The notes under the pieces were generated by a model. That model ran no database searches. It worked only from the letters and a program-made list of their open reading frames with translations, and was not told where the DNA came from. Below are positions 17,896 to 30,345 of a DNA stretch of 64,000 bases, in pieces. Each line of letters begins with the position of its first letter. The stretch's first letter is position 1. The DNA lies in sequence record LR756500.1; one strand, 5' to 3'. A program made the position numbers and the translations under genes.

Positions 17896-19122
17896 TTAAT
17901 TATTTTTAGATTTTTCTCCTAAGTAACCGCCATGATGTCTTTTAGAATAATCTTCTTTTGTAAAATTTATTTTTTTCATTAATTGAACAACTATAATATC
18001 TCCAATAACCATCATAGCGGTTGTTGAAGCAGTAGGTGTTAATCCTAATGGACAAAGTTCTTCTTGTTCTCCCGTATAAAGTACAAAGTTAGCCAATTTA
18101 ACTAATTCAGAATCTAAATTTCCAATTAATACAATAACTTTTAAATCAGAATAAAGATTATGTGCTAAATGAATAAATTCTATAACTTCTTTAGTTTTAC
18201 CGGAATTAGAAATTAAAAATAAAACATCATTTTTTTGAATCATTCCCATATCACCATGCTGTGCTTCTGCTGCATGAATATATATAGCCGGAGTACCAGT
18301 TGAACTTAGTGTTGTTGCTATATTTAATCCAACTTGTCCAGCTTTTCCCATTCCAGAAATGACTACCTTAGATCCTAATTCATGAATATGTTTATAAATT
18401 AAATTAATAACTTCTTCATAAGGATTATCTAATGGTATTTTTTTTATAGCATAAATTTCTTTATCTAATAAATCTTTTATTTCGTTATTTAAATTATTTT
18501 TAACTTTTATTCTTAATCTTTTTATATTTGTATTAACATCACCTAATTTAGCTATTGTAAATAAATTATTATAAGATAATAATAAATGAATACCTTTATA
18601 AATTTTATTTCCAGAATGTTTTCTATAAACAATAATATCATCATTTACTCTTTCATCTATTATAACATCGAATGAGGAAATTTTATAATCTATAATATCA
18701 TTATCATATTTAACAATATTTAAATATTCTTTAAGATTATCATTAATAAAATTAAAAGTATTATTACTGATTACTATTATATTTCCAGGACCTATTCGAG
18801 ATTCTATAGAAATAGAAGATCCAGCACTTATTATTTTTGATAAATATTTTTTTGCTAATAATTTTTTATCATTGATATCATCTAAAACTATATCAATATT
18901 TTTATCTTTTGTTAATGTTAATAATTCATTTATTAATGTATCTTTAACATTAATTAAACTAAAATGTTTATCACATAAAAAGTTTGCTTCTATAATATCT
19001 AATTCTGGATATCCAGTTCTTATTATATTAGGTTCAGATTCATTAAAATCAAAATATTTTATAATATTTTCATCATTTTTGACTCTAATTACAGATATAA
19101 TTTGTTTTATTTTTTCTTCCAT
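17896..19122 (-). CDS. kdsD: Arabinose-5-phosphate isomerase (SIS-only KdsD) with ~205-aa N-terminal extension resembling a gp23-like capsid fragment
   Basis: SGMGKAG.V...IATTLSSTGTP, EAQHGD.G, SNSGKT.E, L.PT.STT, YSKRHHGGYLG. Confidence 0.9.
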   Translation of the reverse strand: MEEKIKQIISVIRVKNDENIIKYFDFNESEPNIIRTGYPELDIIEANFLCDKHFSLINVKDTLINELLTLTKDKNIDIVLDDINDKKLLAKKYLSKIISAGSSISIESRIGPGNIIVISNNTFNFINDNLKEYLNIVKYDNDIIDYKISSFDVIIDERVNDDIIVYRKHSGNKIYKGIHLLLSYNNLFTIAKLGDVNTNIKRLRIKVKNNLNNEIKDLLDKEIYAIKKIPLDNPYEEVINLIYKHIHELGSKVVISGMGKAGQVGLNIATTLSSTGTPAIYIHAAEAQHGDMGMIQKNDVLFLISNSGKTKEVIEFIHLAHNLYSDLKVIVLIGNLDSELVKLANFVLYTGEQEELCPLGLTPTASTTAMMVIGDIIVVQLMKKINFTKEDYSKRHHGGYLGEKSKNN

Positions 19123-19829
19123 TTTATTAAAAGTTTATATAAATCTTCTTTAGTATCAATTCCTATATGATCAAAATGTGTTTCTACACCATAAATATTA
19201 AGTCCATTATCAAGCCATCTTAATTGTTCTAAACTTTCAGATTTTTCTAATTCACTTTCAGATAATTGATTAATCTTAAACAATGCTTTATATGAAAACC
19301 CGTATATTCCTATATGTTTATATGGGTTATAATTATTTTGTTTTAAATTATATGGTATTGGAGATCTACTAAAATATAAAATTCTTTTATTAGATGCTAT
19401 AATTGCTTTAACTGTATTTTTATCTAAATATTCTTCTTTATCTTCTATCTTTTTATAAAGAGTTACAATATTTTTATTTTTTAACAGTTTACAAATATCA
19501 TCTATACATGTTGGATTAATTTCGGGTTCATCTCCTTGTATATTTAAATAATAATCATAATTATATTTTAAATATATTTCTATTAATCGTTCTGTTCCAT
19601 TCTTATGATCTTTGTTTGTAAATTCTACATTACCATTAAATGATTTTACTACATCATATATTCTTTGATCATCTGTTGCAACAATAACATTAGTTAATAA
19701 TTTAGATTTTTTAACTTGTTCATAAACACATTGTATCATAGGTTTTCCATTAATATCTATTAATGGTTTACCGGGTAATCTAGTAGAATTATAACGAGCT
19801 GGAATAACTCCTAAATATGTTTTATTCAT
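19107..19829 (-). CDS. kdsB: CMP-Kdo synthetase (3-deoxy-manno-octulosonate cytidylyltransferase)
   Basis: IPARY.STRLPGKPL, VATDD, NGTER, NIQGDEP, YFSRSPIP, KHIGIY, E.LEQLRWL. Confidence 0.95.
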   Translation of the reverse strand: MNKTYLGVIPARYNSTRLPGKPLIDINGKPMIQCVYEQVKKSKLLTNVIVATDDQRIYDVVKSFNGNVEFTNKDHKNGTERLIEIYLKYNYDYYLNIQGDEPEINPTCIDDICKLLKNKNIVTLYKKIEDKEEYLDKNTVKAIIASNKRILYFSRSPIPYNLKQNNYNPYKHIGIYGFSYKALFKINQLSESELEKSESLEQLRWLDNGLNIYGVETHFDHIGIDTKEDLYKLLIKWKKK

Positions 19830-20091
19830 ATTCTTTAAATGTGGGAGAACACCCTAAATATATTGTATTTCTAATCATTTGCTTTTCATAATCTGCTAAT
19901 CTTTTTTTATTAAAATTTGCTTCGATTATTTCATCACATCTTTTTTTATCTATTGTATAATTTGTAAAGAAAAATTCTTGTTCTGTTTCTTTAGTTGCTA
20001 CCATATTATCCCAATCTCCGACAGGATCTGTTTCTTTATAAAGATCTCTATAAATATTTTCAATAATTATTAAAAGTTTTTTATCTCTCAT
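19822..20091 (-). CDS. Hypothetical protein
   Basis: 89-aa ORF between kdsA and kdsB. Confidence 0.6.
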   Translation of the reverse strand: MRDKKLLIIIENIYRDLYKETDPVGDWDNMVATKETEQEFFFTNYTIDKKRCDEIIEANFNKKRLADYEKQMIRNTIYLGCSPTFKEYE

Positions 20092-20861
20092 TGTAATGCA
20101 TTTTTAATACGTAAACATTTAACTAATATATCATATAGCTTATCTATATGCAATATACTCGATGCATCCGATAAGCTCTCAGAAGGATTTGGATGTACTT
20201 CGAAAAATAATCCATCTACTCCTACTGCAGTAGCTGCTACTGCTAATGTTTCAATCATTTCAGGATTACCTCCTGTAGTATTTCCATTATTAGGTTTTTG
20301 AACAGAATGAGTACAATCCATAATTACTTTATCTGCATATCGTTTCATAATTGGAATAGATGTCATATCCACAACTAAATCTTTATATCCAAATGAACTT
20401 CCTCTTTCTGTTAGCCATACTTCACCGGTTGAAACAGATTTAACTTTTTCTACAACATTTTTCATTGATTCAGGCGACATCCATTGTCCCTTTTTAACAT
20501 TAACTATAGAATTAGTTTTACCTGCACTAATTAATAAATCAGTTTGTCTACATAAAAATGCAGGTATTTGTAAATATGATACATATGAAGATGCTAATGC
20601 AACTTCTATAGTTTCATGCACATCTGTTATAACTGGAATATTATATTGTTCCTTAATGTTTTTAAGAATTTTTAATGCTTCTATATCTCCTATTCCTGTA
20701 AATGAATTTAGATCAGATCTATTTGCTTTTTTATAACTTGCTTTAAATATTAAATCAACGTTTAAATCTTTAGTTATTTTTATTAATTTATTAACAATAT
20801 AATATGTAATATCATTATTTTCTATAACACAAGGACCTGCTATTAAAATTAAATTACTCAT
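20088..20861 (-). CDS. kdsA: Kdo-8-phosphate synthase
   Basis: IAGPCVIE, KASYKKANRS, TDVHE, QIPAFLCRQTDLL, NVKKGQ, ERG.SFGY, D.THSVQ, FFEVHP.P. Confidence 0.96.
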   Translation of the reverse strand: MSNLILIAGPCVIENNDITYYIVNKLIKITKDLNVDLIFKASYKKANRSDLNSFTGIGDIEALKILKNIKEQYNIPVITDVHETIEVALASSYVSYLQIPAFLCRQTDLLISAGKTNSIVNVKKGQWMSPESMKNVVEKVKSVSTGEVWLTERGSSFGYKDLVVDMTSIPIMKRYADKVIMDCTHSVQKPNNGNTTGGNPEMIETLAVAATAVGVDGLFFEVHPNPSESLSDASSILHIDKLYDILVKCLRIKNALQ

Positions 20862-21472
20862 ATCAATTTTTTAAATATTACTTCATTATTATTATATGAC
20901 AATTTTTCATTTTGTTTATTAAATTTATGAACAAATCCACTTTCATTTATAGTAGTATCTGTTATGATTTCGTATTTTGAAAATATATCAGAGTCACTAA
21001 ATAAATAATTTGCATTATAAATAACTAAATATCCATTTATATTTAATAATGAATCTAATTCATTAATCATGTCATTATACTTTTCAAACTCATAAATTCC
21101 TTTACTAGATAATACTTTTTCAGTTTCTGGCCATCTACATAAAACAGACATCGCAAAAATAATATCATATTTATGTTGTTTATGTTCATTTGTATCATAC
21201 AAGAAAAAATTATTATCCTTATATTTATTTTTTGCTTTTTTTATTGCATCAATATTAATATCAACACCATAAATATTTGAATTCTTAAAATACAATTCTT
21301 TTAATGTTTGTGTTTCTGCTCCTATTGAACATCCAAATGATAAAATTTTATCAGCATCCTTTTTTAATTCTGATAATTTTAAAAAAATATTAGGATATCT
21401 ATTATAATTTGTAACTATAGTACTTTGATGTAAATTATTCATATTAATTTTTATTTTTAAATGGACACACAT
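20858..21472 (-). CDS. Class I SAM-dependent methyltransferase
   Basis: ILSFGCSIG.E, IYGVDIN, YDIIFAMSVL. Confidence 0.75.
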   Translation of the reverse strand: MCVHLKIKINMNNLHQSTIVTNYNRYPNIFLKLSELKKDADKILSFGCSIGAETQTLKELYFKNSNIYGVDINIDAIKKAKNKYKDNNFFLYDTNEHKQHKYDIIFAMSVLCRWPETEKVLSSKGIYEFEKYNDMINELDSLLNINGYLVIYNANYLFSDSDIFSKYEIITDTTINESGFVHKFNKQNEKLSYNNNEVIFKKLI

Positions 21473-22229
21473 TATATAATTTATCTAAATCTATATCTAA
21501 TTTATAGGGTTTATATAAATTAAATACACTAGATATACTAGATGAATTATTAATTATTAATGGATTAGTATCATTTCTATTAACAGATCTAAAATAATCA
21601 TTAAATTTAAATCCGGCACCTAACACAGCATCAGAAAATTTTATCCAATAACTTGGAATTCCATAACTATCACCTGCTATTATTCCATGTAATGAACTAG
21701 ATACTATCATTTTACATGATTTAATTTCATTAACAACTTTATTTATATCATCTAAAATATTGATAATTTTTATATTAGATAAATCTTTAACATTATTTAA
21801 CCATTCATTATTTTGATCTACGTAATGTGGAATAATTCCTAAATCATATATTTGTTCTACTTTAGGATTATAAAATATAGAATATAAAAGAGCAGGATCA
21901 CCATATATTTCTGGGCATTTAATTCCTAATTGTATTAATCTATTTTTAGTTAAAGGTCCACGAACGGCATAAATATTTTTAGGAATAGATTTAACATTTC
22001 CATTTCTATTTATAAATCCAGATCCCCATATATTACAAGTTAAGTTAGCATTATCCAAAATACTACCAATAACTAAAAATTTTTCATTATCATTATTAAT
22101 CAAATTATATTCTACTTCTTTATTAGATATTAATTGTACAAGTAATGGATTTAATGCATCACCCCAATTATTACCTTTAATAGATTTAAACCACCATAAT
22201 GGTATTTTATTTATTATAATTTGCCCCAT
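21444..22229 (-). CDS. Polysaccharide pyruvyl transferase family protein
   Basis: NWGD.LN, IGSIL, WGSG, AVRGPLT, GDPALL, GIIPH, SSSLHGII..DSYGIP. Confidence 0.9.
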   Translation of the reverse strand: MGQIIINKIPLWWFKSIKGNNWGDALNPLLVQLISNKEVEYNLINNDNEKFLVIGSILDNANLTCNIWGSGFINRNGNVKSIPKNIYAVRGPLTKNRLIQLGIKCPEIYGDPALLYSIFYNPKVEQIYDLGIIPHYVDQNNEWLNNVKDLSNIKIINILDDINKVVNEIKSCKMIVSSSLHGIIAGDSYGIPSYWIKFSDAVLGAGFKFNDYFRSVNRNDTNPLIINNSSSISSVFNLYKPYKLDIDLDKLYNVCPFKNKN

Positions 22230-23029
22230 TCTTGTCCTATATTTCTAATTATTGAGTGATCGGATGCTAATAAAACATCTTGTTTTTTTCTTTCAACTTG
22301 TAATTTTTCAACATTTTCTGCTACTCTATCTTCTTCAGTAAACTTATGTCTATAATATAAATGCATAGATAAAATATTATCGTCTTTTATAGATTTTGCT
22401 CCGCCTTTTGTGTTTAAATATTTAAAAAGTCTTCTATGGAAATCAGAATCTTCATGTCCATATACTTTAAATCTTTCATCAAACCCTCCTATATTTAATA
22501 CATTATCTTTGTGAGTTACTAACCATGGTGCAAATGGCATTGTCTGTTTTAAATTTTTAGTAGGGTTTGATTCTTCTAAAAAATAACCAGTTATAATTGG
22601 CATATTAGGTTCAACTGAAAATGCTGTTTTATTTCTAATTAACCACCATTTTCCAGAAGTTAATACTATGTTTTTATTTTCAACATCTTTAAAATGTTCT
22701 AATGTTATACTTATAACATCTGAAAAATGAATTATATCACCATCACAAAAAGCTATTATATTTCCTTGAGCTTGTTTAATTCCAATATTTCTTGCATATC
22801 CTGGATTTCTAGAAATTATTTTTTCTTTACTTTTTATTACTTTTATATTAGAATATCTTTTTGTGATATCACTTAAATAATCATCGGTCCCATCTATCGA
22901 TCCATCGTCAACAACAATAATTTCCCATTTATCTATAGGAGCTAATGTAAATAGCATTGATCTAACTGTTAAATCAACGTGCATTTTTCTATTATATGTT
23001 GGTATAATTATACTTAAAAAATCATTCAT
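22214..23029 (-). CDS. GT2-family glycosyltransferase
   Basis: SIIIPTYNR, IIVVDDGS.D, ARN.GI, F.DGD, GGFDE.F..YG.EDSD. Confidence 0.92.
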   Translation of the reverse strand: MNDFLSIIIPTYNRKMHVDLTVRSMLFTLAPIDKWEIIVVDDGSIDGTDDYLSDITKRYSNIKVIKSKEKIISRNPGYARNIGIKQAQGNIIAFCDGDIIHFSDVISITLEHFKDVENKNIVLTSGKWWLIRNKTAFSVEPNMPIITGYFLEESNPTKNLKQTMPFAPWLVTHKDNVLNIGGFDERFKVYGHEDSDFHRRLFKYLNTKGGAKSIKDDNILSMHLYYRHKFTEEDRVAENVEKLQVERKKQDVLLASDHSIIRNIGQEWGKL

Positions 23030-23031
23030 AG

Positions 23032-23613
23032 TTAAAATTTATAGTTAAATAATTTAATATCTTTTTCATATATTTCAGATACTAATTGTATACTTTCTTT
23101 ATCATAATATACTTTATATGATTCGTATTCTTTAATACTTTTATTTATATTTAAAAGATCTAAATTAAAAATATTTTTAAATTGATTATTTATATTTTCA
23201 TGTTTATATACATTATTAATCATTAGTTTATTATCTTCATCATAAATATATTTATATTGATTTTTCCAACCTGGATGCCAAAATTTATCTGGATTATTTT
23301 TAAGTAATATTAAACACTCTTTAAATGTTAATCCTAATAATAAATCATAATCTTTATGTTTAGTTTCATCTTCAGTTGAATGCCAATAACTTTTTTCCAT
23401 TTTTGCATACTCATAGTTTGATACTACTCTATCCCAAGGATTTCTAACTACTGCAAATTTAAAATAATTATTCCAATTATCAGGAAAAGTATCTTTATAA
23501 TATTTCCAAGCTCTATGAAAAGATCTTTTCATATCTAAAATTTTAATAATAGATGTACCTGCATTTTTAGGTATATGTATAAATATTGCTCTGTACTTAT
23601 CTGATATTGGCAT
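23032..23613 (-). CDS. Sulfotransferase (Sulfotransfer_2 family)
   Basis: FIHIPKNAGTSI (5'-PSB), FAVVRNPWDR.VS.Y (3'-PB), Y..DI.LF.Y.F. Confidence 0.88.
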   Translation of the reverse strand: MPISDKYRAIFIHIPKNAGTSIIKILDMKRSFHRAWKYYKDTFPDNWNNYFKFAVVRNPWDRVVSNYEYAKMEKSYWHSTEDETKHKDYDLLLGLTFKECLILLKNNPDKFWHPGWKNQYKYIYDEDNKLMINNVYKHENINNQFKNIFNLDLLNINKSIKEYESYKVYYDKESIQLVSEIYEKDIKLFNYKF

Positions 23614-24229
23614 AATTATTAATATTTATATTTTCATTAACTATTCCTAATTTTGTTAACAAATATGATCTATCTTCTCTTTTCCAATATCCTATAAATT
23701 TTATACTTTTTCTCCTCATAAAAATCGTTTTAAACCCTGGAAATATTTCAAATATTTTATAAATATCATAACTTTGTAAATGATCTGGAGTTAATGGATT
23801 TTGATTATATGGAAATGAAAAATAAACATCATTTAAATTTTTCATCATAGTTTCTTTAAAATATATTAATGATTTATTATCTAAATGTTCTAGAACTTCT
23901 AATGCTATTAATAAATTACATTCTTTTAGAATTTCATTCGTTTGATCTAAATCTAATTTAATTAATGATAAATTTTTATATTTTCTAAAATATTCATTTC
24001 CATAATCTATAGCATCTTGAGCCATATCAAACCCTATAAATGTTAAATCAGGCCGTTTTGACGCTAAATATGCAGTTCCTACTCCTATTCCACATCCCAT
24101 TTCTACTACTTTTCCTGATTTAGGTAAAAATCTTTCAGCAAGTTCATATCTAAATTTAATATATGGAGCAATACTATCCCAATCAATTAATGTTGTTCTA
24201 TATTGTCCATCTGGTACATTTTTATTCAT
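23597..24229 (-). CDS. Class I SAM-dependent methyltransferase
   Basis: VVEMGCGIG.G, GFD, LEVLEHL. Confidence 0.8.
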   Translation of the reverse strand: MNKNVPDGQYRTTLIDWDSIAPYIKFRYELAERFLPKSGKVVEMGCGIGVGTAYLASKRPDLTFIGFDMAQDAIDYGNEYFRKYKNLSLIKLDLDQTNEILKECNLLIALEVLEHLDNKSLIYFKETMMKNLNDVYFSFPYNQNPLTPDHLQSYDIYKIFEIFPGFKTIFMRRKSIKFIGYWKREDRSYLLTKLGIVNENININNYANIR

Positions 24230-24232: not shown

Positions 24233-25231
24233 TTATTCAAAGTATTTTAATGTTTTAATAATATCAGGATTTCCTGAATTAAACTGTAAATTTAATAATG
24301 ATGTTAAATATTTATTAATATTTGATTCATTAATTTTATAATTTAAAAAATTTCTTTGTTCTTCTATATTTTCCGAAGTTACTTCATATGTAACTCCTTT
24401 GTTTGAAAAATAATTTATACCATAAGTCATAATAGGTTTATGAAATAATAACATTTCATTAATAATAGTAGAATTAATTGCTATTATACCATTAGAATAA
24501 TAACCCCATGATATACTATTTAAACTTTCTGTATATTGTGTATTTGTATATTTTTGACATTCTTTTAAAATGTTCTGTTTATTAATAATACTATCTTTTG
24601 GATGAGGTTTAATAATTATTAATTTATCTTGAAATAACATAACAATATGTTTAATAAAACTTTCCATATCTTTAAAATATGGAGAATATTTAACTATTTG
24701 TGTATCAGTTTTTATTTGTAATGGTATAAATAAATAATTATTTGCATCAGGTTTTTTTATGTCTTTAATATATTCATTTTGTTTTATACGTATTAAATTT
24801 AAATTTATATTTTCATCTATAATATTTTTTTCTACATGTTCTGAACCACCATTAGTACCTTTTCTATCTATTACAAATATTCCTTTTTGTGGAAACCAAC
24901 CGTGTTCACAATATATTATTTTTGTGAATTTTTTTAATTCATTTAAAATAATAGGTTGATGTCCACGCTCTTCATCATCAAAATCTCCATTCCAAACAAT
25001 TACATGCGTAGCATTTAATGATTTAATTTTTTGTATAACTTCAATATCACTATTAAAAGAAAAAGAATTAGATTTCGTCATTAAATTATTATCGAAAAGC
25101 CGCGGAGGTTTAATATGATTTCTGCATATAAAATATTTTTGATATGGTATGCCCCAATATAAATTTTTAATTAATCCTGGCAAACTATTATGCCATGATA
25201 AAAAAATTATGATTTTATTGTCTCTTTCCAT
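24233..25231 (-). CDS. Capsule-synthesis (KpsS/KpsC, GT107-like) putative beta-Kdo transferase
   Basis: E.GWFP, F.PLQ...DTQI, IIKPHP.D, INST...E.LL..KP. Confidence 0.75.
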   Translation of the reverse strand: MERDNKIIIFLSWHNSLPGLIKNLYWGIPYQKYFICRNHIKPPRLFDNNLMTKSNSFSFNSDIEVIQKIKSLNATHVIVWNGDFDDEERGHQPIILNELKKFTKIIYCEHGWFPQKGIFVIDRKGTNGGSEHVEKNIIDENINLNLIRIKQNEYIKDIKKPDANNYLFIPLQIKTDTQIVKYSPYFKDMESFIKHIVMLFQDKLIIIKPHPKDSIINKQNILKECQKYTNTQYTESLNSISWGYYSNGIIAINSTIINEMLLFHKPIMTYGINYFSNKGVTYEVTSENIEEQRNFLNYKINESNINKYLTSLLNLQFNSGNPDIIKTLKYFE

Positions 25232-27717
25232 AATTGTACATATTGTTTAACGTGATTTTCCCATGTTAAATTTTTAACTTTTTCGCTGTTGATTAATCTA
25301 TTTTCTTCTAAAATTGATCTATTTTTATTAATATTATTAAGTGCATTAACAAACCCTTCGACATTATTTTGTTCAAATATGTATTCAGAACTTAAATGTT
25401 CAGGTACTTCTCCAACTCTTGTTGATAAAACAGTATGACCATATTTCATAGATTCTATTAATGGTAGTGGAGTACCTTCATATTTAGAAGTAATTAAAAC
25501 CACATCTATATTTTTATATAAATTAACAAAATTTCCATCTTTATTAGTTATTACTTCAAATCCTAATGCTTTAAGTTTATTAATAATTATATCCATATTA
25601 GGTGAAAGAATAGTAAATTTAAAAGATTTATTATCTATAGCATTTGCAATGGTTAATAATTTTTCTTCATTTTTTACTCCATCACTATAAGATCGTCCAA
25701 TATATCCTATATTTATTTTATTTTGTGAATTAATTGAATCTTTAGTAATAATAAAGTCGCTTACTCCTAATGGTATATACCTAACATCTATATTGCTAAG
25801 ACGACTTTTAATATAATTATATTGTTCTTTTGAAGTACATACTATAGTTTTAAACTTATCCATATTTTTAATTCTATAATTTGTGTTTGCTCTAGAAATA
25901 TCAAACAAACTGTCATGGATCATATGTATTCCTTTTCTTAATACATTATTTTTAATATTATATTTCATTCTTTCAAAATATAGTATAGATGTTCTATACA
26001 CAGGTCTCCAATGTTGATATACATCACAATCCATTAAAGGATTAATGGAAGGTATTATAGTAAATTCTGGAGCATATTTTTGATATTCTTTAATCATAGA
26101 GCTAAAAACCCAGCCCCAATGATTAGACATAACCATATTTATAATTGGTTTATTTATAGATTTTGCTTCTAATCTTTTCCTATTAGATTCTTCTTGTAAT
26201 TTTTTAAAAAATATTTCTTTTTCTGCAACAGTTTTTAATGTATTACTATATAACTCATTATCATTAAATAATTTTTCATCAATATTTTTGATATGATAAT
26301 TATTTTCATTAAACAGTACTTTTCTATTAGGTATACTATTATAGTTTGTAATACTTTTTTGTGTAGTCGAAACTTTATTTTTAAATCTTCTAGAGGCTTG
26401 ATAATGAATAATAACTGGATGTATATTTGGATATAATTTTTTCATCAAATCAAAAATAAATGTATATTCAGGAGGAAGATTTTTAACTATCAATCCATTA
26501 TTTTTCATTTTATCCATAGCTTTACCAAGGTTCCATTGTTCCATTGTTTTAGCATTAGGACCTTCTGCATTATTTTGATCTCTCCATATTCTACATAATT
26601 CTCGAGTTCTTTCATTATTTTCCATATATATGGTTCCACTAAGGCATTCATTTTCTCTCCATCTAAAATCTTGAAATCTAACTGCAACATCAGCTGTATA
26701 ATTTATAAAAAGCTCGGGAACTCTTTGTATAATTGCATCACAATCAATATATAACAATCTTTTATCTTTAAATTCATCTAGAACATAAAGCATAAATTCT
26801 GCTTTAAATCTAGTATTTTTTTGCCAATCACCTAAATTTTCTATACCTGCAAAATAATAATTTAGTTCAAATTTATCACATGATGCAATAGTTTTTTTAG
26901 CTTCTTCTTCATATGGAGTATTAATGGTAAAATATCCTACAACTAATATATCAGATAATCTATTTTTATTATTATAATTACATATAATAGATTTAATATT
27001 GCCTATATTATTTGTGATATTTATTTTATTATTTTTATCATCAGTAGTTTTCACTTTTTCATTATTATGTATTATATTAATATGTTTAAATTTATTTTTT
27101 GCATTGCTTAAAGATTTTTCAAAATTAGTTTTTATTCTTAAATCACTTATATTATTAGTATTTAAATCATAAATTATAATTTCTTGATAATCCATCAATA
27201 ATCCCAATTGTATAGCAGAATAATTACTACTATTTCCATTAATAAAATTATTTTTATCATTTGAAAATTCATTATTATTTAATGATTTAGATTCTAAAAT
27301 ATAATCAAATTTATGTAATTTATCATAAACTAATCCATGTTTATGATCATAAAAATGCCCATTATGAGAAGATAAATTAGAATTTATATTATTTAAAATA
27401 AATATCTTCTTAATTGAATTTTCAATATCTAATTTATTTAAATTTGAATAATTAATAGTTAAAAAAATATCAACTCTTTTTATATTATTAGTTGATATAT
27501 TACTAGCTAATATATCATATTCTTCTATATTAACTAATGAACTAATTTTAGAATATGATAAATTACCACATAAAATAATAAGTTTATTTCTTTTTTTAAC
27601 GGGTAACATATTTAAAATATTTGAATTATTTAAATTTTCATTTTTTTTACATAATTTTTTTGTATGAATATTTTTACTTAGAATTTGCGCATTTATTTTT
27701 AAAAAGTTCTGTTTCAC
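25207..27717 (-). CDS. Multidomain glycosyltransferase: degenerate N-terminal domain + GT-A (DxD) + C-terminal GT4-like GT-B
   Basis: YFT..TPYE...W.KN...KA...LYIDCDA central domain; S.YEG.PL.LIE.M..G..V.ST.VG C-terminal domain. Confidence 0.8.
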   Translation of the reverse strand: MKQNFLKINAQILSKNIHTKKLCKKNENLNNSNILNMLPVKKRNKLIILCGNLSYSKISSLVNIEEYDILASNISTNNIKRVDIFLTINYSNLNKLDIENSIKKIFILNNINSNLSSHNGHFYDHKHGLVYDKLHKFDYILESKSLNNNEFSNDKNNFINGNSSNYSAIQLGLLMDYQEIIIYDLNTNNISDLRIKTNFEKSLSNAKNKFKHINIIHNNEKVKTTDDKNNKINITNNIGNIKSIICNYNNKNRLSDILVVGYFTINTPYEEEAKKTIASCDKFELNYYFAGIENLGDWQKNTRFKAEFMLYVLDEFKDKRLLYIDCDAIIQRVPELFINYTADVAVRFQDFRWRENECLSGTIYMENNERTRELCRIWRDQNNAEGPNAKTMEQWNLGKAMDKMKNNGLIVKNLPPEYTFIFDLMKKLYPNIHPVIIHYQASRRFKNKVSTTQKSITNYNSIPNRKVLFNENNYHIKNIDEKLFNDNELYSNTLKTVAEKEIFFKKLQEESNRKRLEAKSINKPIINMVMSNHWGWVFSSMIKEYQKYAPEFTIIPSINPLMDCDVYQHWRPVYRTSILYFERMKYNIKNNVLRKGIHMIHDSLFDISRANTNYRIKNMDKFKTIVCTSKEQYNYIKSRLSNIDVRYIPLGVSDFIITKDSINSQNKINIGYIGRSYSDGVKNEEKLLTIANAIDNKSFKFTILSPNMDIIINKLKALGFEVITNKDGNFVNLYKNIDVVLITSKYEGTPLPLIESMKYGHTVLSTRVGEVPEHLSSEYIFEQNNVEGFVNALNNINKNRSILEENRLINSEKVKNLTWENHVKQYVQLWKETIKS

Positions 27718-28334
27718 ATTAATGTAATATTATTTGCTTTATTTATATATTTTGTAAAATATGTTTTTTCCACAATAGATGAATGACTTTTATGATAAAT
27801 AGATCTAAATACATTTTTTTCATTTTGTTTAAAATTTTCAAAAAAATCAAATCCATATAAGTTTAATTCTAAAAAATTTATTCTAGTAACTAAAAAATTA
27901 AAAGTAGCAGCTCCAGTGGAAGGAATAAACATTATTTTAAAATCTTTTCTTCTAAATTCATCATAAAACTCTTTACTACATATATAAACGTTATTAAATA
28001 ATTCTAAAAGTTTATTCTCTCTATCTGAATATCCAGTTTTCGACCATCTACTTAATTGAAGAATATATTTAGCATTTGCAGCTTTACATAATCTAACAGC
28101 ATTGGAAACAGTATTCATTTGTGGAACAAATATATGTGTTTTTTCTCCTAATGCATTTTTATATTTTGGTAATGCATCTATAGAATAATTTAATCTTATT
28201 ATTATATCGTTTGAATCAATAGATTTTCCATTATTTTCATTTAATAATTTAGTTGAATTTCCAACCAAAGCTATTTTTTTTCCATTACAATATTCTTGTA
28301 TTTTTTCTAAAGGAATAGATATATTTTTATTCAT
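27714..28334 (-). CDS. GT29 (sialyltransferase-like) protein
   Basis: IALVGNS..L....G..IDS.D.IIRLN...G.KT (L-motif), PSTG, LYGFDF. Confidence 0.75.
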   Translation of the reverse strand: MNKNISIPLEKIQEYCNGKKIALVGNSTKLLNENNGKSIDSNDIIIRLNYSIDALPKYKNALGEKTHIFVPQMNTVSNAVRLCKAANAKYILQLSRWSKTGYSDRENKLLELFNNVYICSKEFYDEFRRKDFKIMFIPSTGAATFNFLVTRINFLELNLYGFDFFENFKQNEKNVFRSIYHKSHSSIVEKTYFTKYINKANNITLM

Positions 28335-28420: not shown

Positions 28421-28450
28421 CCGAATGCTAACAATAATGTTAGCATTTGG
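28421..28450. terminator. Hairpin/terminator downstream of hsp20
   Basis: AATGCTAACA-ATAA-TGTTAGCATT 10-bp stem. Confidence 0.5.
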
Positions 28451-28473: not shown

Positions 28474-28830
28474 TTATAAAATTTTTACTTTCTTTGATTT
28501 TAGTTTTTCTTTTAAAGGACATTTAATACTTAAAACTCCATTTTTTATAGAAGCCTCTATATTATCTAAATCTACGTCCCCTTTTACTTTAAATTTCTTT
28601 TCAAATTTCTTTTTTAAACCTATTTCTTCTCCAGAGTAAGAAATTAAAATAATATCACCTTCAGTTTTTAAATCTATATCCGATTTATCATATCCGGGAA
28701 TAAGTACATCTAAAATATAATAATCATCTTCTTTTTTAACTTCATATGAAGGTGAAGTTATTGTATTTACACTTGTTAAAAGTGAATTAAATAATTCATT
28801 TGCTAAATCATTAAATGTTGTTGTTGTCAT
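28474..28830 (-). CDS. Small heat-shock protein (Hsp20/alpha-crystallin)
   Basis: Y.L....PG..K.DI, F.K.F......D...I.A...NGVL.I..P. Confidence 0.9.
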   Translation of the reverse strand: MTTTTFNDLANELFNSLLTSVNTITSPSYEVKKEDDYYILDVLIPGYDKSDIDLKTEGDIILISYSGEEIGLKKKFEKKFKVKGDVDLDNIEASIKNGVLSIKCPLKEKLKSKKVKIL

Positions 28831-28937: not shown

Positions 28938-28940
28938 ATT

Positions 28941-28973: not shown

Positions 28974-28980
28974 AAAGTTA

Positions 28981-29238
28981 TTATGCTTGTACTTCAGCAT
29001 TAACTACTGGAGTTGAAGCTTCTGCTTCTTTTCTTGGTTTAAATACTCTAACTGCTTTAGATACTAATTCAGCATCTTCTAACGAATATACACCAGCTTT
29101 TTGAGCAAGTGATGCTCCTTGAATTAAAATACCAATTGCTTGTTCTTGAGTTAACTCATCTTTAAAAGGATCAAATTGTTTTTCTTTACTTTCCATAATT
29201 TTAAAATTTTTATTTGTAATTACATTTATTATATGCAA
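28981..29238 (-). CDS. Hypothetical protein (true start probably MESKEKQF)
   Basis: A TAGGTTTG promoter element (29236-29243) overlaps the annotated start. Confidence 0.6.
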   Translation of the reverse strand: MHIINVITNKNFKIMESKEKQFDPFKDELTQEQAIGILIQGASLAQKAGVYSLEDAELVSKAVRVFKPRKEAEASTPVVNAEVQA

Positions 29239-29256
29239 ACCTAATTATAAGTTTCA

Positions 29257-30345
29257 TTAAATATTTTTAATTATTATTTTAGATATATATTCAACATCAT
29301 TTTCAGTTAGTTCAGAATACATTGGTATAGCTAATACTTCTTTTGACAAATTTAATGCAATTGGCATTTCTATATTTCCATAAAGTTTTTTAATTAATGT
29401 AAATTCTGAACATATAGGATAAAAATAAGGTCTACTTGATACATTTTTAACTAATAAATCATTTTTAATTTTATCTCTATTTGGATGTTTAATTATCATA
29501 TAGATATAATTATAATGAATATTTTTATTATCATATTTGGTAAATATTATATCATTTGGAAGATATTTTTTATAAAACTCAAATACATTCTTTCTTTTTG
29601 ATATTATTAAATCCAAATCATCTAATATACATAAACCCATAGATGCTTGAAATTCATTCATTTTACCGTTTGTTCCTGGATATATTACGTCATATTCTTC
29701 ATTAAATCCAAAGTTACTGAATAGTTTAGATATTCTAAATATTTCTGGATTATTAAATGTAATTAATCCTCCTTCTATTGTATGAAATACTTTTGTAGCA
29801 TGAGTTGAAAAAACAGAAACATCTCCAAAATTACCTATACCAATATTATTAATAGTAACTCCAAACATATGAGCTGAATCATATATTGTATACAAATCAT
29901 ATTTTTTAGCAATAATTTCTATCTTTTCTATATCTACAGGATTACCATAAATATGAACTGGTAATATAGCAGCTGTATTTTTTGTTATTTTTTCTTCTAT
30001 TTTATTAATATCTATATTACCATCATTAATGTTAACATCAATAAATATAGGAATATTTCCAGAATTAATAATAGATGTTATGGTTGCAGCAAATGTAAAA
30101 GGAGTAGTTATTATTTCTTTTCCTTTTATTCCTAAAATAGAAATAGTAGCTTCTAAAGATGTTGTTCCATTTAAAAAAGGATACACATAATTTACACCTA
30201 AATAATTTTTAGCAGAATTAATATATTCATTATGAATAGGACCAAAATTAGTAAGCCAAGATTCTTTCCAAATTCTATTTAAATATTTAATATATTTCTT
30301 TTTATCAGGTAAATAAGGTTTAACTACAGGTATATGTTTTTTCAT
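29257..30345 (-). CDS. DegT/DnrJ/EryC1/StrS PLP aminotransferase (VioA-like NDP-4-keto-sugar aminotransferase)
   Basis: LTNFGP, NGT..L, TPFTF.AT, PVH.YGNP, YDSAH.FG, SFHATK-like STHATKVFHTIEGG, NGKMNEFQA. Confidence 0.92.
   Translation of the reverse strand: MKKHIPVVKPYLPDKKKYIKYLNRIWKESWLTNFGPIHNEYINSAKNYLGVNYVYPFLNGTTSLEATISILGIKGKEIITTPFTFAATITSIINSGNIPIFIDVNINDGNIDINKIEEKITKNTAAILPVHIYGNPVDIEKIEIIAKKYDLYTIYDSAHMFGVTINNIGIGNFGDVSVFSTHATKVFHTIEGGLITFNNPEIFRISKLFSNFGFNEEYDVIYPGTNGKMNEFQASMGLCILDDLDLIISKRKNVFEFYKKYLPNDIIFTKYDNKNIHYNYIYMIIKHPNRDKIKNDLLVKNVSSRPYFYPICSEFTLIKKLYGNIEMPIALNLSKEVLAIPMYSELTENDVEYISKIIIKNI

What the first reader, a model, noticed from the sequence alone, without database searches (positions are those of the whole stretch)
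17896..30345. Giant-virus-like glycosylation island centred on CMP-Kdo
kdsD, kdsB and kdsA (kdsC not seen in the window) sit with two candidate CMP-ulosonate transferases (KpsS/KpsC GT107-like; GT29-like). The island also has GT2, a multidomain GT-A+GT4, a pyruvyltransferase, a sulfotransferase, two methyltransferases and a VioA-like aminotransferase. This is a self-contained pathway for a decorated Kdo glycan. No flippase, polymerase or export genes are visible, which favours a cytoplasmic target such as virion proteins over a cell-surface capsule. Comparable sets are known in Mimiviridae (Kdo genes in CroV, viosamine in mimivirus), much less so in phages.
Basis: partly seen in the sequence, partly recalled or inferred. 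Interest (0 to 1): 0.7.

Follow-up and report, generated by a model that had tools for sequence, protein, structure and literature searches.

The report
Kdo sugar-coat operon in huge phage
A 462-kb T4-like phage from groundwater carries an 11-kb operon that makes the bacterial sugar Kdo in activated form and holds about ten enzymes to build and decorate a Kdo-containing glycan; related phages carry variants of the same operon, and what the glycan is attached to is still unknown.

Summary
KdsA and KdsB pass curated equivalog cut-offs. The "KdsD" is a CBS-less SIS isomerase fused to an unknown 210-aa domain. The KpsS/C-like protein keeps the GT107 QXXXD and HP motifs. The 206-aa "GT29-like" protein keeps sialylmotifs L, S and VS and folds (pLDDT 95.6) like mammalian sialyltransferases. 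The 836-aa protein is a fusion of a degenerate Maf/MptE-like domain, a GT-A domain most like the chlorovirus capsid glycosyltransferase A64R, and a GT4.

The genome is not a giant virus. It is a T4-like huge phage (gp23 capsid, T4-type replication genes; LR756500.1). Variants of the island sit in the same slot, after HSP20, in related T4-like phage contigs. The pathway is not self-contained: KdsC, NDP-sugar synthesis and ATP sulfurylase are missing. An APS kinase (1794-2336) and a 4,6-dehydratase lie elsewhere in the genome.

The whole genome lacks flippase, ABC exporter, polymerase/ligase and priming transferases. This fits virion glycosylation, but it fits LOS/LPS-core-type assembly exported by host MsbA/Lpt equally well. 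I favour the host-envelope reading slightly (0.45 against 0.30). This is a new variant of the known phage "LPS-like" gene clusters.

The parts
17896..19122 (-). 408-aa fusion protein. Residues 213-406 are a CBS-less single-domain SIS arabinose-5-phosphate isomerase (first Kdo step). Residues 1-210 are a domain of unknown function.
   Evidence: Pfam SIS 1e-16. It matches only positions 2-152 of 268 in the NCBIfam KpsF/GutQ model. PDB 3ETN, a 220-aa SIS-only isomerase, matches at E 6e-70. Relatives encode a stand-alone 198-aa SIS protein that aligns to residues 211-407 at 52-62% identity. The N-domain has no Pfam or Atlas hit.
19107..19829 (-). KdsB, CMP-Kdo synthetase
   Evidence: NCBIfam NF003952 276 bits against cut-off 193; TIGR00466 188 against 155. 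It is the only CTP_transf_3 gene in the genome.
19822..20091 (-). 89-aa ORF of unknown function between kdsB and kdsA
   Evidence: No Pfam hit. L060 has a small ORF in the same position but without detectable similarity.
20088..20861 (-). KdsA, Kdo-8-phosphate synthase
   Evidence: NCBIfam equivalogs NF003543 344 bits against 242 and TIGR01362 334 against 314. The nearest cellular relatives (48-57% identity) are Bacteroidota or Ignavibacteriota.
20858..21472 (-). SAM-dependent methyltransferase 1
   Evidence: Methyltransf_31 1.6e-11
21444..22229 (-). Polysaccharide pyruvyltransferase
   Evidence: PS_pyruv_trans 1.8e-16. Orthologues at 45-48% identity in L061 and L064.
22214..23029 (-). GT2 glycosyltransferase
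   Evidence: Glycos_transf_2 1.4e-23
23032..23613 (-). PAPS-dependent carbohydrate sulfotransferase (Sulfotransfer_2)
   Evidence: PF03567 1.9e-12. Orthologue at 47% identity in L060.
23597..24229 (-). SAM-dependent methyltransferase 2
   Evidence: Methyltransf_12/25 about 1e-8
24233..25231 (-). Single-module GT107-like (KpsS/KpsC family) candidate retaining beta-Kdo transferase
   Evidence: Capsule_synth 6.9e-15. PDB KpsC 6MGD E 0.002, with QXXXD and KPHP aligned. The family invariants are E109, Q172, D176, H210, P211 and INST. 15 relatives at 45-53% identity. No cellular genome carries the subfamily signature motifs.
26968..27717 (-). N-domain of the 836-aa protein (residues 1-250): Maf/MptE/Cst-like fold with degenerate motifs, probably catalytically inactive here
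   Evidence: VIA-align: MptE 8SD5 Z 10.9, Maf 5MU5 Z 9.9, Cst-I 2P56 Z 9.5 over residues 34-220. The GxGPS, GFD and THFH motifs of the relatives are lost.
26371..26958 (-). Middle domain of the 836-aa protein (residues 254-449): GT-A, Nucleotid_trans (GT77-type) with an invariant DxD motif
   Evidence: PF03407 2.5e-6, 28.1 bits against cut-off 22. D325 and D327 are invariant. Best fold match is PBCV-1 A64R, 2P6W, Z 17.2 over 183 residues.
25207..26370 (-). C-terminal GT4 domain of the 836-aa protein (residues 450-836)
   Evidence: Glyco_trans_1_4 and Glycos_transf_1 1.4e-10. Best NCBIfam hit is LPS 1,6-galactosyltransferase, 7e-10. It is a separate gene in L061, L064 and L065.
27714..28334 (-). 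Mini-GT29: 206-aa soluble sialyltransferase-fold enzyme, candidate inverting CMP-Kdo transferase; first gene of the operon
   Evidence: PF00777 1.9e-9. Motifs L, S and VS are conserved. AlphaFold2 pLDDT 95.6. Foldseek: ST6GalNAc2 E 7e-9, then ST8SiaIII, ST3Gal-I and CstII. 2,560 cluster representatives at E<=1e-10.
28424..28447 (-). Terminator-like hairpin between HSP20 and the GT29 operon
   Evidence: 10-bp stem followed by a T-rich tail
28474..28830 (-). HSP20: conserved anchor gene beside the island, not a glycan gene
   Evidence: PF00011 5.9e-11. It sits directly upstream of GT29 in L060, L064, L065, L068, L069 and L070.
28981..29238 (-). Conserved 85-aa ORF that accompanies HSP20 and GT29 in the lineage; function unknown
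   Evidence: 43-48% identity to ORFs in L060, L062, L064 and L065
29257..30345 (-). DegT/DnrJ/EryC1 sugar aminotransferase (DesI/VioA-type 4-aminotransferase is plausible but not resolved)
   Evidence: PF01041 3.7e-83. Best NCBIfam hits are DesI 5.7e-65 and PseC, both below cut-off. PDB 7B0D and 2PO3.
1794..2336 (-).
   Evidence: PF01583 2.6e-55. APS kinase also accompanies the island in L060 and L070.
16944..17893 (-). Two further ORFs packed directly after the isomerase gene (119 aa unknown; 196 aa DUF6939); their role is unknown
   Evidence: Adjacent or overlapping coordinates with no gap. DUF6939 1e-9.

Best explanation
The island is an auxiliary glycan-assembly operon of a T4-like huge phage.

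Shown by homology:
- A CBS-less SIS isomerase makes arabinose-5-P.
- KdsA condenses it with PEP to give Kdo-8-P.
- KdsB activates free Kdo to CMP-Kdo.
- The phosphatase step is not encoded and must come from the host.

Inferred:
- CMP-Kdo is used by two soluble transferases of opposite stereochemistry. One is a single-module GT107-like enzyme, which would retain configuration and give beta-Kdo through an Asp176 adduct. The other is a mini-GT29, which would invert and give alpha-Kdo.
- A GT2, an A64R/GT8-like GT-A domain and a GT4 add hexoses from host UDP-sugars.
- The product is decorated by pyruvyl-, sulfo- and methyl-transferases. PAPS comes from the phage APS kinase acting on host APS.
- The product may also carry a 4-amino-6-deoxy sugar made by the DegT enzyme together with the distant 4,6-dehydratase.
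- The result is a strongly anionic Kdo heteroglycan built at the cytoplasmic face.

Most likely acceptor (inferred, not shown): a host envelope glycolipid, either lipid A-core (LOS-type outer-core extension) or a phosphatidylglycerol-type anchor. Housekeeping host machinery (MsbA/Lpt) would then carry it to the surface. That would remodel the infected cell's surface, for example by masking receptors against superinfecting phages or against re-adsorption of progeny.
For: - Pathway enzymes pass curated cut-offs. Kdo is the only ulosonate route in the genome.
- GT107 catalytic motifs are conserved (motifs as defined in PMC10148158).
- The GT29 motifs and fold are confirmed.
- A GT29 enzyme using CMP-Kdo has a precedent in plants, RCKT1 (PMC11288761).
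- Mini-GT29 travels with Kdo genes in two separate phage lineages: 22 of 80 IMG/VR loci. In the second lineage it is the only glycosyltransferase beside kdsB-kdsA.
- All the enzymes lack transmembrane segments.
- The enzyme families here and in the relatives' islands (GT4 WaaB-like, GT8/A64R-like GT-A, GT2, GT25, GT11, sialyltransferase-like, Kdo transferases) are those of LOS/LPS-core assembly, which needs no dedicated flippase or polymerase. That matches the genome-wide absence of those genes.
- All characterised GT107 and GT99 beta-Kdo transferases act on lipid-linked glycans (PMC10148158, PMC9587256).
- KdsA and the SIS isomerase are Bacteroidota-like, which implies a Gram-negative host that makes LPS.
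- Earlier authors read similar clusters in cyano- and pelagimyophages as host LPS modification (PMC7029224, PMC12801897).
Against: - No acceptor has been shown, and no experiment on any member of this island family exists.
- The phage GT107-like subfamily was not found in 185,579 cellular species genomes. It has His instead of the Asp that follows the catalytic Glu in KpsC and contacts the Kdo acceptor there, so its acceptor may be new.
- The best structural match of the GT-A domain is a capsid-glycosylating enzyme of a chlorovirus, and the N-domain fold is that of Maf flagellin glycosyltransferases.
- A conserved core with a variable periphery across phages of presumably different hosts also fits a conserved phage-encoded acceptor.
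- Sulfation and pyruvylation are unusual on LPS cores.
- The benefit of surface remodelling to a lytic phage is assumed, not shown.
Confidence: 0.45

Rival explanations
1. Virion glycosylation. The same cytoplasmic enzymes build the Kdo glycan on the phage's own structural proteins, as giant viruses and some mycobacteriophages do. This would give the particle an anionic coat.
For: - All enzymes are soluble, and the 462-kb genome has no lipid-carrier priming, flippase or export genes.
- The GT-A domain best matches the PBCV-1 capsid glycosyltransferase A64R (Z 17.2). The N-domain has the Maf fold, and Maf glycosylates a protein in the cytoplasm with CMP-nonulosonates.
- The GT107-like family was not found in cellular genomes, and Atlas clusters of the MptE/GT-A family are 100% Uroviricota.
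- The conserved core (GT29 plus MptE/GT-A) across the lineage fits a conserved phage acceptor.
Against: - No protein-linked Kdo is known, to my knowledge.
- GT107 and pyruvyltransferase families have only lipid-linked glycan acceptors so far.
- The Maf-like domain is degenerate in this phage.
- The island sits among early/metabolic-type genes (PhoH, HSP20, helicase), not structural genes.
- Fold matches to A64R are to a generic retaining GT-A fold; glycogenin and LgtC follow closely.
- Missing export genes do not discriminate between this and LOS-type assembly.
Confidence: 0.3
2. Precursor boosting only. The phage mainly raises CMP-Kdo and PAPS supply to keep host LPS synthesis and the envelope intact during a long infection. 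The transferases would then be minor accessories or act on host pathways unchanged.
For: Many IMG/VR viral contigs carry only kdsA, or kdsA with kdsB, without the rest of the island. Auxiliary genes of phages often reinforce bottleneck steps.
Against: Here ten transferases and modifying enzymes are translationally packed with the Kdo genes in one operon. The transferase core is more conserved in the lineage than the Kdo genes are.
Confidence: 0.1
3. DNA hypermodification. The glycosyltransferases decorate hydroxymethyl-pyrimidines in phage DNA with an oligosaccharide.
For: Phage glycosyltransferase clusters related to LPS enzymes attach mono- to trisaccharides to 5hmC (bioRxiv 10.1101/2023.12.21.572611). 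A T4 beta-glucosyltransferase homologue lies about 10 kb away at 37925-39181.
Against: The BGT homologue is not in the operon. Kdo, sulfate and pyruvate would add negative charge to packaged DNA. None of the island's families (GT107, GT29, pyruvyl- or sulfotransferase) is among the DNA-glycosylating enzymes described there. No 5hmC-forming enzyme lies in the island.
Confidence: 0.04
4. Artefact: a bacterial capsule or LPS locus mis-assembled into, or mis-binned with, a phage contig.
For: KdsA and the SIS isomerase are 50-60% identical to Bacteroidota proteins.
Against: - GC content and strand bias match the flanks.
- T4-like genes lie on both sides within the window.
- One 28.5-kb contig at about 54x depth spans the laid 6-kb stretch of the island without differences.
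- The same island sits in the same slot in at least ten other phage contigs.
Confidence: 0.01

Closest known systems
Kdo gene clusters of giant viruses (CroV crov265-267; Fadolivirus fdv948-951)
   Same: A virus encodes an isomerase, Kdo-8-P synthase and cytidylyltransferase next to glycosyltransferases and methyltransferases. The isomerase is the C-terminal domain of a fusion protein. All functions are known only in silico (PMC9614988).
   Different: Those are Nucleocytoviricota that infect eukaryotes; this is a T4-like tailed phage. In CroV and Fadolivirus the N-terminal fusion partner is the KdsC phosphatase. Here the N-domain shows no HAD signature and KdsC is absent. GT107-like and GT29-like transferases are not reported for CroV.
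'LPS/cell-wall' gene clusters of T4-like cyanomyophages and pelagimyophages (S-SCSM2R, P-SSM2, S-SCSM1, PMP genomes)
   Same: T4-like phages with clusters of glycosyltransferases and sugar-nucleotide enzymes. S-SCSM2R has kdsA and kdsB at 43% identity to the window KdsA. They share PhoH/HSP20-type neighbourhoods. The proposed role is host-surface modification (PMC12801897, PMC7029224).
   Different: Those papers describe no Kdo transferase, GT29-like, GT107-like, sulfotransferase with APS kinase, or pyruvyltransferase set. Kdo is not mentioned at all for pelagimyophages. The present phage comes from groundwater, is 462 kb long, has 23% GC and carries Bacteroidota-like genes.
KpsS/KpsC (GT107) of E. 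coli group 2 capsules and WbbB (GT99)
   Same: Capsule_synth family; conserved QXXXD nucleophile motif, HP motif and catalytic Glu; soluble or peripheral enzymes that use CMP-beta-Kdo (PMC10148158).
   Different: A single 332-aa module rather than the dual-module 675-aa KpsC. The residue after the catalytic Glu is His, not Asp. No KpsM/T/E/D partners are present. The subfamily was found only in phage-type contexts.
Plant RG-II enzymes: GT29 RCKT1 (putative CMP-beta-Kdo transferase) and GT77 RGXT
   Same: A GT29 protein working with Kdo rather than sialic acid, together with a GT77-type (PF03407) GT-A enzyme and methylated sugars (PMC11288761).
   Different: The plant enzymes are Golgi type II membrane proteins of about 400 aa. 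The phage protein is a 206-aa soluble core without a TM segment or the disulfide cysteines, like the 23 bacterial GT29-like sequences noted in PMC5811610.
LOS sialylation and Maf flagellin glycosylation in Campylobacter and relatives (Cst-I/II GT42; Maf/DUF115)
   Same: Small soluble GT-A-variant CMP-ulosonate transferases act in the cytoplasm, with no dedicated exporter, beside GT2, GT4, GT8 and GT25 enzymes. The fold matches are CstII E 6.6e-5 for the mini-GT29 and Maf Z 9.9 for the N-domain.
   Different: The donor here is inferred to be an 8-carbon Kdo, not a 9-carbon nonulosonate, because the genome has no NeuB. The Maf-like domain has lost its motifs in this phage.
PBCV-1 A64R capsid glycosyltransferase; mycobacteriophage virion glycosylation (the latter from my own knowledge, not checked here)
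   Same: Virus-encoded cytoplasmic glycosylation of structural proteins. A64R domain 1 is the best structural match of the GT-A domain (Z 17.2).
   Different: There is no evidence here for a protein acceptor. Sequence identity to A64R is only 10%.

Membership tests
Kdo-8-phosphate synthase (KdsA) | Scores above the curated equivalog cut-off of the NCBIfam KDO8P synthase models | tested here: met
   NF003543 344.4 bits against 242; TIGR01362 334.4 against 314
CMP-Kdo synthetase (KdsB) | Scores above the curated cut-off of the KdsB models and better than NeuA/PseF-type cytidylyltransferases | tested here: met
   NF003952 276 bits against 193; TIGR00466 188 against 155; PseF only 48 bits
Arabinose-5-phosphate isomerase (KdsD/GutQ/KpsF) | SIS catalytic domain of the KpsF/GutQ type | tested here: met
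   TIGR00393 3e-46 over model positions 2-152; PDB 3ETN E 6e-70
Arabinose-5-phosphate isomerase (KdsD/GutQ/KpsF) | C-terminal CBS domain pair of canonical KdsD | tested here: not met
   The protein ends right after the SIS domain and scores fall below the full-length cut-offs. It belongs to the CBS-less single-domain type represented by 3ETN.
Complete bacterial Kdo pathway | KdsC Kdo-8-P phosphatase present | tested here: not met
   For TIGR01670 the best hit in the genome is E 0.03 with an internal stop. The only HAD-like gene in the window is a T4 Pnk-type protein at 3322-4278.
GT107 (KpsS/KpsC beta-Kdo transferases) | Membership of Pfam Capsule_synth and similarity to solved KpsC | tested here: met
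   PF05159 55.7 bits against cut-off 20; 6MGD E 0.002
GT107 (KpsS/KpsC beta-Kdo transferases) | Invariant QXXXD motif (Asp nucleophile) and HP motif | tested here: met
   Q172-I-K-T-D176 aligns with QVESD of KpsC. H210-P211 is conserved. Both are invariant in 16 family members (motifs defined in PMC10148158).
GT107 (KpsS/KpsC beta-Kdo transferases) | Catalytic Glu base followed by Asp (Glu66-Asp67 of KpsC-N), and the Trp42 equivalent | tested here: inconclusive
   E109 and W80 are invariant at plausible spacing, but the next residue is His110, not Asp. The N-terminal region is not covered by the HMMER alignment, so the equivalence is inferred.
GT107 (KpsS/KpsC beta-Kdo transferases) | Works with KpsM/T/E/D ABC export on a phosphatidylglycerol-Kdo anchor | tested here: not met
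   No ABC-2 permease anywhere in the phage genome. Use of a host system was not testable.
GT107 (KpsS/KpsC beta-Kdo transferases) | Transfers Kdo from CMP-beta-Kdo with retention of configuration | not testable with these tools
   Needs an enzyme assay or intact-mass detection of the Asp-Kdo adduct
GT29 (sialyltransferase family) | Pfam GT29 match and sialylmotifs L, S and VS | tested here: met
   PF00777 37.8 bits against cut-off 23; all 78 aligned family members hit it. VGNS..ID..D (L), PS[TS]G..GFDFF (S) and H184-x4-E189 (VS) are invariant or nearly so.
GT29 (sialyltransferase family) | GT-A variant 2 sialyltransferase fold | tested here: met
   Model pLDDT 95.6. The top 23 Foldseek hits are mammalian GT29 structures (E 7e-9 to 8e-7, TM by query 0.57-0.65), followed by GT42 CstII.
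GT29 (sialyltransferase family) | Type II membrane topology and conserved disulfide cysteines of the eukaryotic enzymes | tested here: not met
   No hydrophobic segment. 206 aa against about 270 aa for the eukaryotic catalytic domain. This is as described for bacterial GT29-like sequences (PMC5811610).
GT29 (sialyltransferase family) | Donor is a CMP-activated ulosonic acid (here proposed to be CMP-Kdo) | not testable with these tools
   The support is indirect. Kdo is the only ulosonate pathway in the genome, and Kdo genes co-occur with the family in two phage lineages.
Maf / MptE-like (DUF115) CMP-nonulosonate transferases | MptE-like fold | tested here: met
   Residues 34-220: 8SD5 Z 10.9, 5MU5 Z 9.9, 2P56 Z 9.5. 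The model is only moderate there, pLDDT about 70-85.
Maf / MptE-like (DUF115) CMP-nonulosonate transferases | Conserved nucleotide-binding and catalytic motifs (GxGPS, GFD, following His) | tested here: not met
   The motifs are present in the L064, L065, L068, L069 and L070 homologues but replaced in the window protein (GNLSY; YDL; no HFH).
GT77-type Nucleotid_trans GT-A | Pfam PF03407 above cut-off plus a DxD motif | tested here: met
   28.1 bits against 22 when scanned as a separate domain. D325-x-D327 is invariant.
Nucleocytoviricota (giant virus) | Giant-virus genome context rather than a tailed-phage one | tested here: not met
   T4 gp23 capsid protein E 2e-34. T4-type topoisomerase II, gp41, UvsX, gp46/47 and beta-glucosyltransferase homologues. 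The record is deposited as a phage. NCLDV capsid models were not searched.
Wzx/Wzy- or ABC-transporter-dependent polysaccharide locus | Priming transferase, flippase or ABC permease, and polymerase or ligase | tested here: not met
   PF02397, PF00953, PF01943, PF01061 and PF04932 are all absent from the 462-kb record, while the controls ring.

The most novel reading that the evidence does not exclude
A tailed phage of a Gram-negative host glycosylates its own virion proteins in the cytoplasm with a sulfated, pyruvylated, Kdo-containing glycan. It would use phage-specific CMP-Kdo transferases (mini-GT29, GT107-like, and Maf-like in relatives). This would be the first protein-linked Kdo, and a bacteriophage counterpart of giant-virus capsid glycosylation, diversifying across a whole lineage of T4-like phages.
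Probability: 0.25. Interest if true: 0.85.

Novelty: new variant of a known kind. Interest (0 to 1): 0.6.

Why it matters
Glycan gene clusters in large aquatic phages are usually written off as "LPS-related auxiliary genes", and none has been characterised. This island gives them a concrete, testable chemistry:

- A complete CMP-Kdo supply apart from the phosphatase step.
- Two intact Kdo-transferase candidates of opposite stereochemistry.
- A PAPS-dependent sulfation branch.

The work also exposes two enzyme families that are almost unstudied. One is a ~190-aa soluble "mini-GT29" with 2,560 cluster representatives at E<=1e-10; it may be the minimal sialyltransferase-fold enzyme and a ready source of Kdo or ulosonate transferases for glyco-engineering. 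The other is a GT107-like family seen so far only in phage-type contigs.

Finding the acceptor would settle an old question: do large lytic phages remodel the host surface, or coat themselves as giant viruses do?

Tried and rejected
- KdsC: the TIGR01670 search of the genome gave only E 0.03 with an internal stop. The HAD-containing ORF at 3322-4278 is a T4 polynucleotide kinase/phosphatase type.
- N-terminal 210 aa of the isomerase fusion: no Pfam hit, no usable Atlas feature hit, and structural neighbours only at TM below 0.5. The idea that it replaces KdsC, as the fusion partner does in CroV, has no support.
- WaaZ (KdoIII transferase) lead: this came from 'faint' precomputed hits on relatives' ~500-aa proteins. 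The family is not in the searchable library, and hmmscan of the window domains at E<=5 gave nothing. Dropped.
- Word-based homologue search for the N-domain of the 836-aa protein found only the protein itself. BLASTP shows it is not a recent duplicate of the mini-GT29.
- Expression timing from promoters: sigma-70-like matches are at chance level (197 against 174 expected). The T4 late motif TATAAATA is not enriched in intergenic DNA and is absent upstream of gp23. No conclusion.
- No RNA runs hold the sequence. Laying contigs at 80% likeness showed no strain variation in the island; the listed 'joints' are AT-rich noise with sides under 30 letters.
- The deep GT29 alignment A3 was too divergent for a pattern scan; A1 was used instead.
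- The genome-contig scan with the GT107-like alignment found no relatives. This is pattern-limited, so absence from cells is not proven.
- Host assignment rests only on KdsA and SIS similarity to Bacteroidota/Ignavibacteriota. No CRISPR-spacer or tRNA evidence was sought.
- No balanced phylogeny was built, because only the 80 best cellular hits, all from the FCB group, were available.
- Complex prediction was not used, because no specific protein-protein contact is claimed.

Full report
WHAT IS THERE

The window has 21-33% GC, and nearly every ORF lies on the minus strand. Pfam and NCBIfam give these assignments:

- an SIS sugar-phosphate isomerase
- KdsB (276 bits against a cut-off of 193)
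- KdsA (344 bits against 242)
- two SAM methyltransferases
- a polysaccharide pyruvyltransferase
- a GT2
- a Sulfotransfer_2 enzyme
- a Capsule_synth (KpsS/KpsC) protein
- an 836-aa multidomain glycosyltransferase
- a short GT29-like protein
- HSP20
- a DegT aminotransferase

The genes from 28334 down to 16944 overlap or abut one another. A terminator-like hairpin (28424-28447) and a 139-bp gap separate them from HSP20. I therefore read GT29 through the SIS gene, plus two unknown ORFs, as one operon. DegT lies in the upstream unit.

WHAT GENOME IT IS

The region is 100% identical to LR756500.1, an "uncultured phage" of 462,018 bp. The following points show that this is a T4-like huge phage and not a eukaryotic giant virus:

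- The record encodes a T4 gp23-type major capsid protein (E 2e-34).
- It has T4-type topoisomerase II subunits and a helicase.
- It has gp41-, UvsX- and gp46/47-like genes.
- It has a sigma factor, a PD-(D/E)XK nuclease and a T4 beta-glucosyltransferase homologue.

The DNA comes from a groundwater metagenome. It appears at low depth in a second sample of that study, and as a few near-identical short contigs in a soil metagenome of another study.

The nearest cellular relatives of KdsA (48-57% identity) are Bacteroidota or Ignavibacteriota in 79 of the 80 best hits. The isomerase domain matches the CBS-less stand-alone SIS isomerase 3ETN at E 6e-70. Together these point to an FCB-group origin and probably an FCB-group host. 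This is an inference from a pattern-limited scan.

ANATOMY OF THE LESS OBVIOUS PROTEINS

(i) The 408-aa "KdsD".
- Related phages encode a stand-alone 198-aa SIS protein that aligns to residues 211-407 at 52-62% identity.
- The first 210 residues are therefore an added domain. It has no detectable relatives and no confident fold.
- In CroV and Fadolivirus the isomerase is also the C-terminal half of a fusion, whose N-terminal half is the KdsC phosphatase (PMC9614988). Here nothing supports a HAD phosphatase, and KdsC is absent from the genome.

(ii) The Capsule_synth protein.
- It aligns to the KpsC crystal structure across the catalytic region.
- In an alignment of 16 family members it keeps E109, Q172-x3-D176, H210-P211 and an INST nucleotide-binding motif invariant.
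- These correspond to the QXXXD aspartate nucleophile, the HP motif and the glutamate base that define retaining beta-Kdo transferases (PMC10148158).
- It differs from KpsC in three ways. It is a single 332-aa module. It has His rather than Asp after the glutamate. Its subfamily signature was not found in any of 185,579 cellular species genomes.

(iii) The 206-aa GT29-like protein.
- The Pfam match covers only motif L. Alignment with syntenic relatives, and then with 78 members, shows motif L (VGNS..ID..D), motif S (PS[TS]G..GFDFF) and motif VS (H184-x4-E189) all conserved. Every member hits Pfam GT29.
- The AlphaFold2 model is excellent (pLDDT 95.6, pTM 0.92).
- Its best PDB matches are human ST6GalNAc2, ST8SiaIII and pig ST3Gal-I (E about 1e-8, TM about 0.65), followed by GT42 CstII and MptE.
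- A profile search found 7,591 cluster representatives at E<=1e-3 and 2,560 at E<=1e-10; most of the 150 listed are ~190-aa stand-alone proteins. The literature I could search notes only 23 bacterial GT29-like sequences and no viral ones (PMC5811610).

(iv) The 836-aa protein is a three-domain fusion. Relatives encode it as two or three separate genes.
- Residues 34-220 adopt the MptE/Maf/Cst-I fold (Z 10.9, 9.9 and 9.5). They have lost the GxGPS, GFD and THFH motifs that the relatives keep, so this domain is probably inactive here.
- Residues 254-449 are a PF03407 (GT77-type) GT-A domain with an invariant DxD. Its best structural match is the PBCV-1 capsid glycosyltransferase A64R (Z 17.2 over 183 residues). 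Retaining GT8- and GT6-type enzymes follow at Z 13-15.
- Residues 450-836 are a GT4 domain. Its best named hit is an LPS 1,6-galactosyltransferase.

None of the island's enzymes has a predicted transmembrane segment.

WHAT THE REST OF THE GENOME ADDS

- Absent from all 462 kb, with positive controls ringing: KdsC, ABC-2 permease, Wzx, Wzy/O-antigen ligase, polyprenyl-phosphate priming transferases (PHPT and WecA types), WaaA, NDP-sugar nucleotidyltransferases, NeuB, ATP sulfurylase and CysD.
- Present: an APS kinase inside the window at 1794-2336, and one SDR 4,6-dehydratase among the replication genes (best hit dTDP-glucose 4,6-dehydratase, below cut-off).
- The island holds the genome's only cytidylyltransferase, its only GT4 and one of its two GT2 genes.

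Kdo is therefore the only ulosonate the phage can activate. The pathway leans on the host for the phosphatase step, UDP/dTDP-sugars, APS, SAM and PEP. It is not self-contained.

THE ISLAND IS ONE VARIANT OF A RECURRENT PHAGE MODULE

Contigs that carry close homologues of the GT107-like or mini-GT29 proteins show the same slot and order:

sigma factor ... PD-(D/E)XK ... membrane protein - PhoH - amidase - HSP20 - small ORF - mini-GT29 - MptE-like/GT77-like protein - (GT4) - (GT107-like)

A variable set follows. It draws on GT2, GT25, GT11, GT-D, pyruvyl-, sulfo-, methyl- and acetyl-transferases, SIS, KdsA, KdsB, APS kinase and DegT (L060, L061, L064, L065, L068, L069, L070). The window has the same anchor genes. 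These relatives have 29-32% GC and come from Tara Oceans, Saanich Inlet and other metagenomes.

Among 80 IMG/VR loci with a mini-GT29, 22 have a Kdo-pathway gene within 10 kb. They fall into two lineages:

- The first is the HSP20-anchored lineage described above.
- The second (about 34% GC) carries a compact cassette: JmjC, radical-SAM, SDR, cupin, KdsB, KdsA, one unknown ORF, then the GT29-like gene. There the GT29-like enzyme is the only glycosyltransferase beside the CMP-Kdo genes.

This is independent support for pairing mini-GT29 with CMP-Kdo. A plant GT29 (RCKT1) is already the genetically supported Kdo transferase of pectin RG-II (PMC11288761).

In GenBank phages, KdsA is rare. Besides this record, the clearest match among 50,697 records is cyanophage S-SCSM2R; the other 12 hits are two Acinetobacter records with annotated kdsA and weaker matches (at or below 30% identity) in unannotated Listeria, Staphylococcus, Enterococcus and faecal phage records. 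Its authors called kdsA/kdsB a first report for cyanophages in December 2025 (PMC12801897). Work on pelagimyophages mentions LPS-related glycosyltransferases but not Kdo (PMC7029224).

HOW IT MOST LIKELY WORKS

Shown by homology:
ribulose-5-P -> arabinose-5-P (SIS) -> Kdo-8-P (KdsA) -> [host phosphatase] -> Kdo -> CMP-Kdo (KdsB).

Inferred:
- The GT107-like enzyme adds beta-Kdo through an Asp176 adduct.
- The mini-GT29 adds alpha-Kdo by inversion.
- GT2, the GT-A domain and GT4 add hexoses.
- Pyruvyl-, sulfo- (via the phage APS kinase) and methyl-transferases decorate the product.
- DegT with the 4,6-dehydratase may supply a 4-amino-6-deoxy sugar. "VioA-like" is plausible, but DesI-, PseC- and perosamine-type enzymes score similarly.

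The product would be a strongly acidic heteroglycan built at the cytoplasmic face.

The acceptor is the open question. I confirm the absence genome-wide, but it does not discriminate. LOS/LPS-core extension uses exactly these kinds of soluble enzymes on lipid A-core (GT4, GT8-like, GT2, GT25, sialyltransferase-like, Kdo transferases) and is exported by housekeeping MsbA/Lpt.

All characterised beta-Kdo transferases and pyruvyltransferases act on lipid-linked glycans. I therefore rate host-envelope remodelling at about 0.45.

Virion glycosylation gets about 0.30, on these grounds:
- the A64R and Maf fold matches
- the apparently phage-restricted enzyme families
- the conserved core with a variable periphery

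The remaining rivals and their weights:
- Precursor boosting alone: about 0.10.
- DNA hypermodification: about 0.04. It is documented for other phage glycosyltransferase clusters, and a BGT homologue lies nearby, but an anionic glycan on DNA is implausible.
- Assembly artefact: about 0.01.

NOVELTY AND VERDICT

Virus-encoded Kdo pathways (CroV, Fadolivirus, one cyanophage) and phage "LPS-like" clusters are known, and all remain uncharacterised. The following points are new here:

- CMP-Kdo synthesis is coupled to two intact, phage-type Kdo-transferase candidates and a sulfation branch.
- The island is recognised as a conserved but hypervariable module of a T4-like phage lineage.
- The mini-GT29 family is very large.
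- A degenerate Maf-like domain is fused to an A64R-like GT-A domain and a GT4.

I classify it as a new variant of a known kind, with interest 0.6. The most novel reading not excluded is protein-linked Kdo on virions (probability 0.25).

Noticed in passing
window 1794-2336 (-): APS kinase (PF01583, 2.6e-55) lies 16 kb from the island. The genome has neither ATP sulfurylase nor CysD, so the phage supplies only the APS-to-PAPS step. APS kinase also accompanies the island in L060 and L070.
   Followed up: yes
window 30345-31265 (-): 306-aa polytopic membrane protein (4-5 hydrophobic segments in the first 150 aa) with a long Lys/Glu-rich coiled-coil tail. Its N-terminal half is conserved (31-59% identity) at the same position in L060, L064 and L065. 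It is the only membrane protein next to the island; its function is unknown.
   Followed up: partly
window 37925-39181 (-) and 36948-37643 (-): A T4 beta-glucosyltransferase homologue (PF09198 6.7e-23; phrog_7922 2e-52) sits next to a SIR2-family gene. This suggests glucosylated hydroxymethyl-pyrimidine DNA in this phage.
   Followed up: no
window 16063-16878 (-): A GIY-YIG plus NUMOD3 homing endonuclease lies directly downstream of the operon, between it and a phage helicase (14331-16070).
   Followed up: no
window 6160-7821 (-): Cluster of five tRNA genes (Leu-TAG, Trp, Val, Glu, His).
   Followed up: no
window 52149-58558 (-): The T4-like topoisomerase II subunits (gp52-like 52149-53381; gp39-like 56768-58558) are separated by three ORFs of unknown function (53378-56725). 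Two of them hit phrog_22677, a family of unknown function.
   Followed up: no
window 894-4278 (-): YqeY-like protein, NADAR domain protein (8e-45) and a T4 Pnk-type kinase/HAD-phosphatase lie near the APS kinase.
   Followed up: no
window 60701-63985 (-): 1094-aa ORF in the most GC-rich part of the window (about 33% against about 22%). It has no PHROG hit.
   Followed up: no
L200:5416-10792 (IMG/VR 3300030389_002268) and about 20 similar loci: A second phage lineage carries a compact cassette: JmjC, radical SAM/SPASM, SDR, cupin, KdsB, KdsA, a 216-aa unknown ORF, then a GT29-like gene. It sits beside a 1940-aa ORF on the other strand. It may make and transfer a modified Kdo.
   Followed up: partly
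L069:9635-11716 and L070:1-7457: In L069 the MptE-like/GT-A protein has two tandem MptE-like domains (693 aa). L070 (GCA_033813855.1) has an ORF of more than 2846 aa with many GT2 and methyltransferase domains next to its HSP20-GT29 island.
   Followed up: no
L063 (Logan SRR26992429 contig, GC 43%): The GT107-like, GT29, GT77-like and pyruvyltransferase set occurs beside an arylsulfotransferase and a membrane Acyl_transf_3/SGNH O-acyltransferase. Those enzymes act outside the cytoplasm, which hints that in that organism the glycan is exported. Whether the contig is phage or bacterial is unknown.
   Followed up: no
W01 (LR756500.1) 408547-408933 (-): The genome's only other GT2 gene (306-aa ORF) lies far from the island. 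Its neighbourhood was not examined.
   Followed up: no
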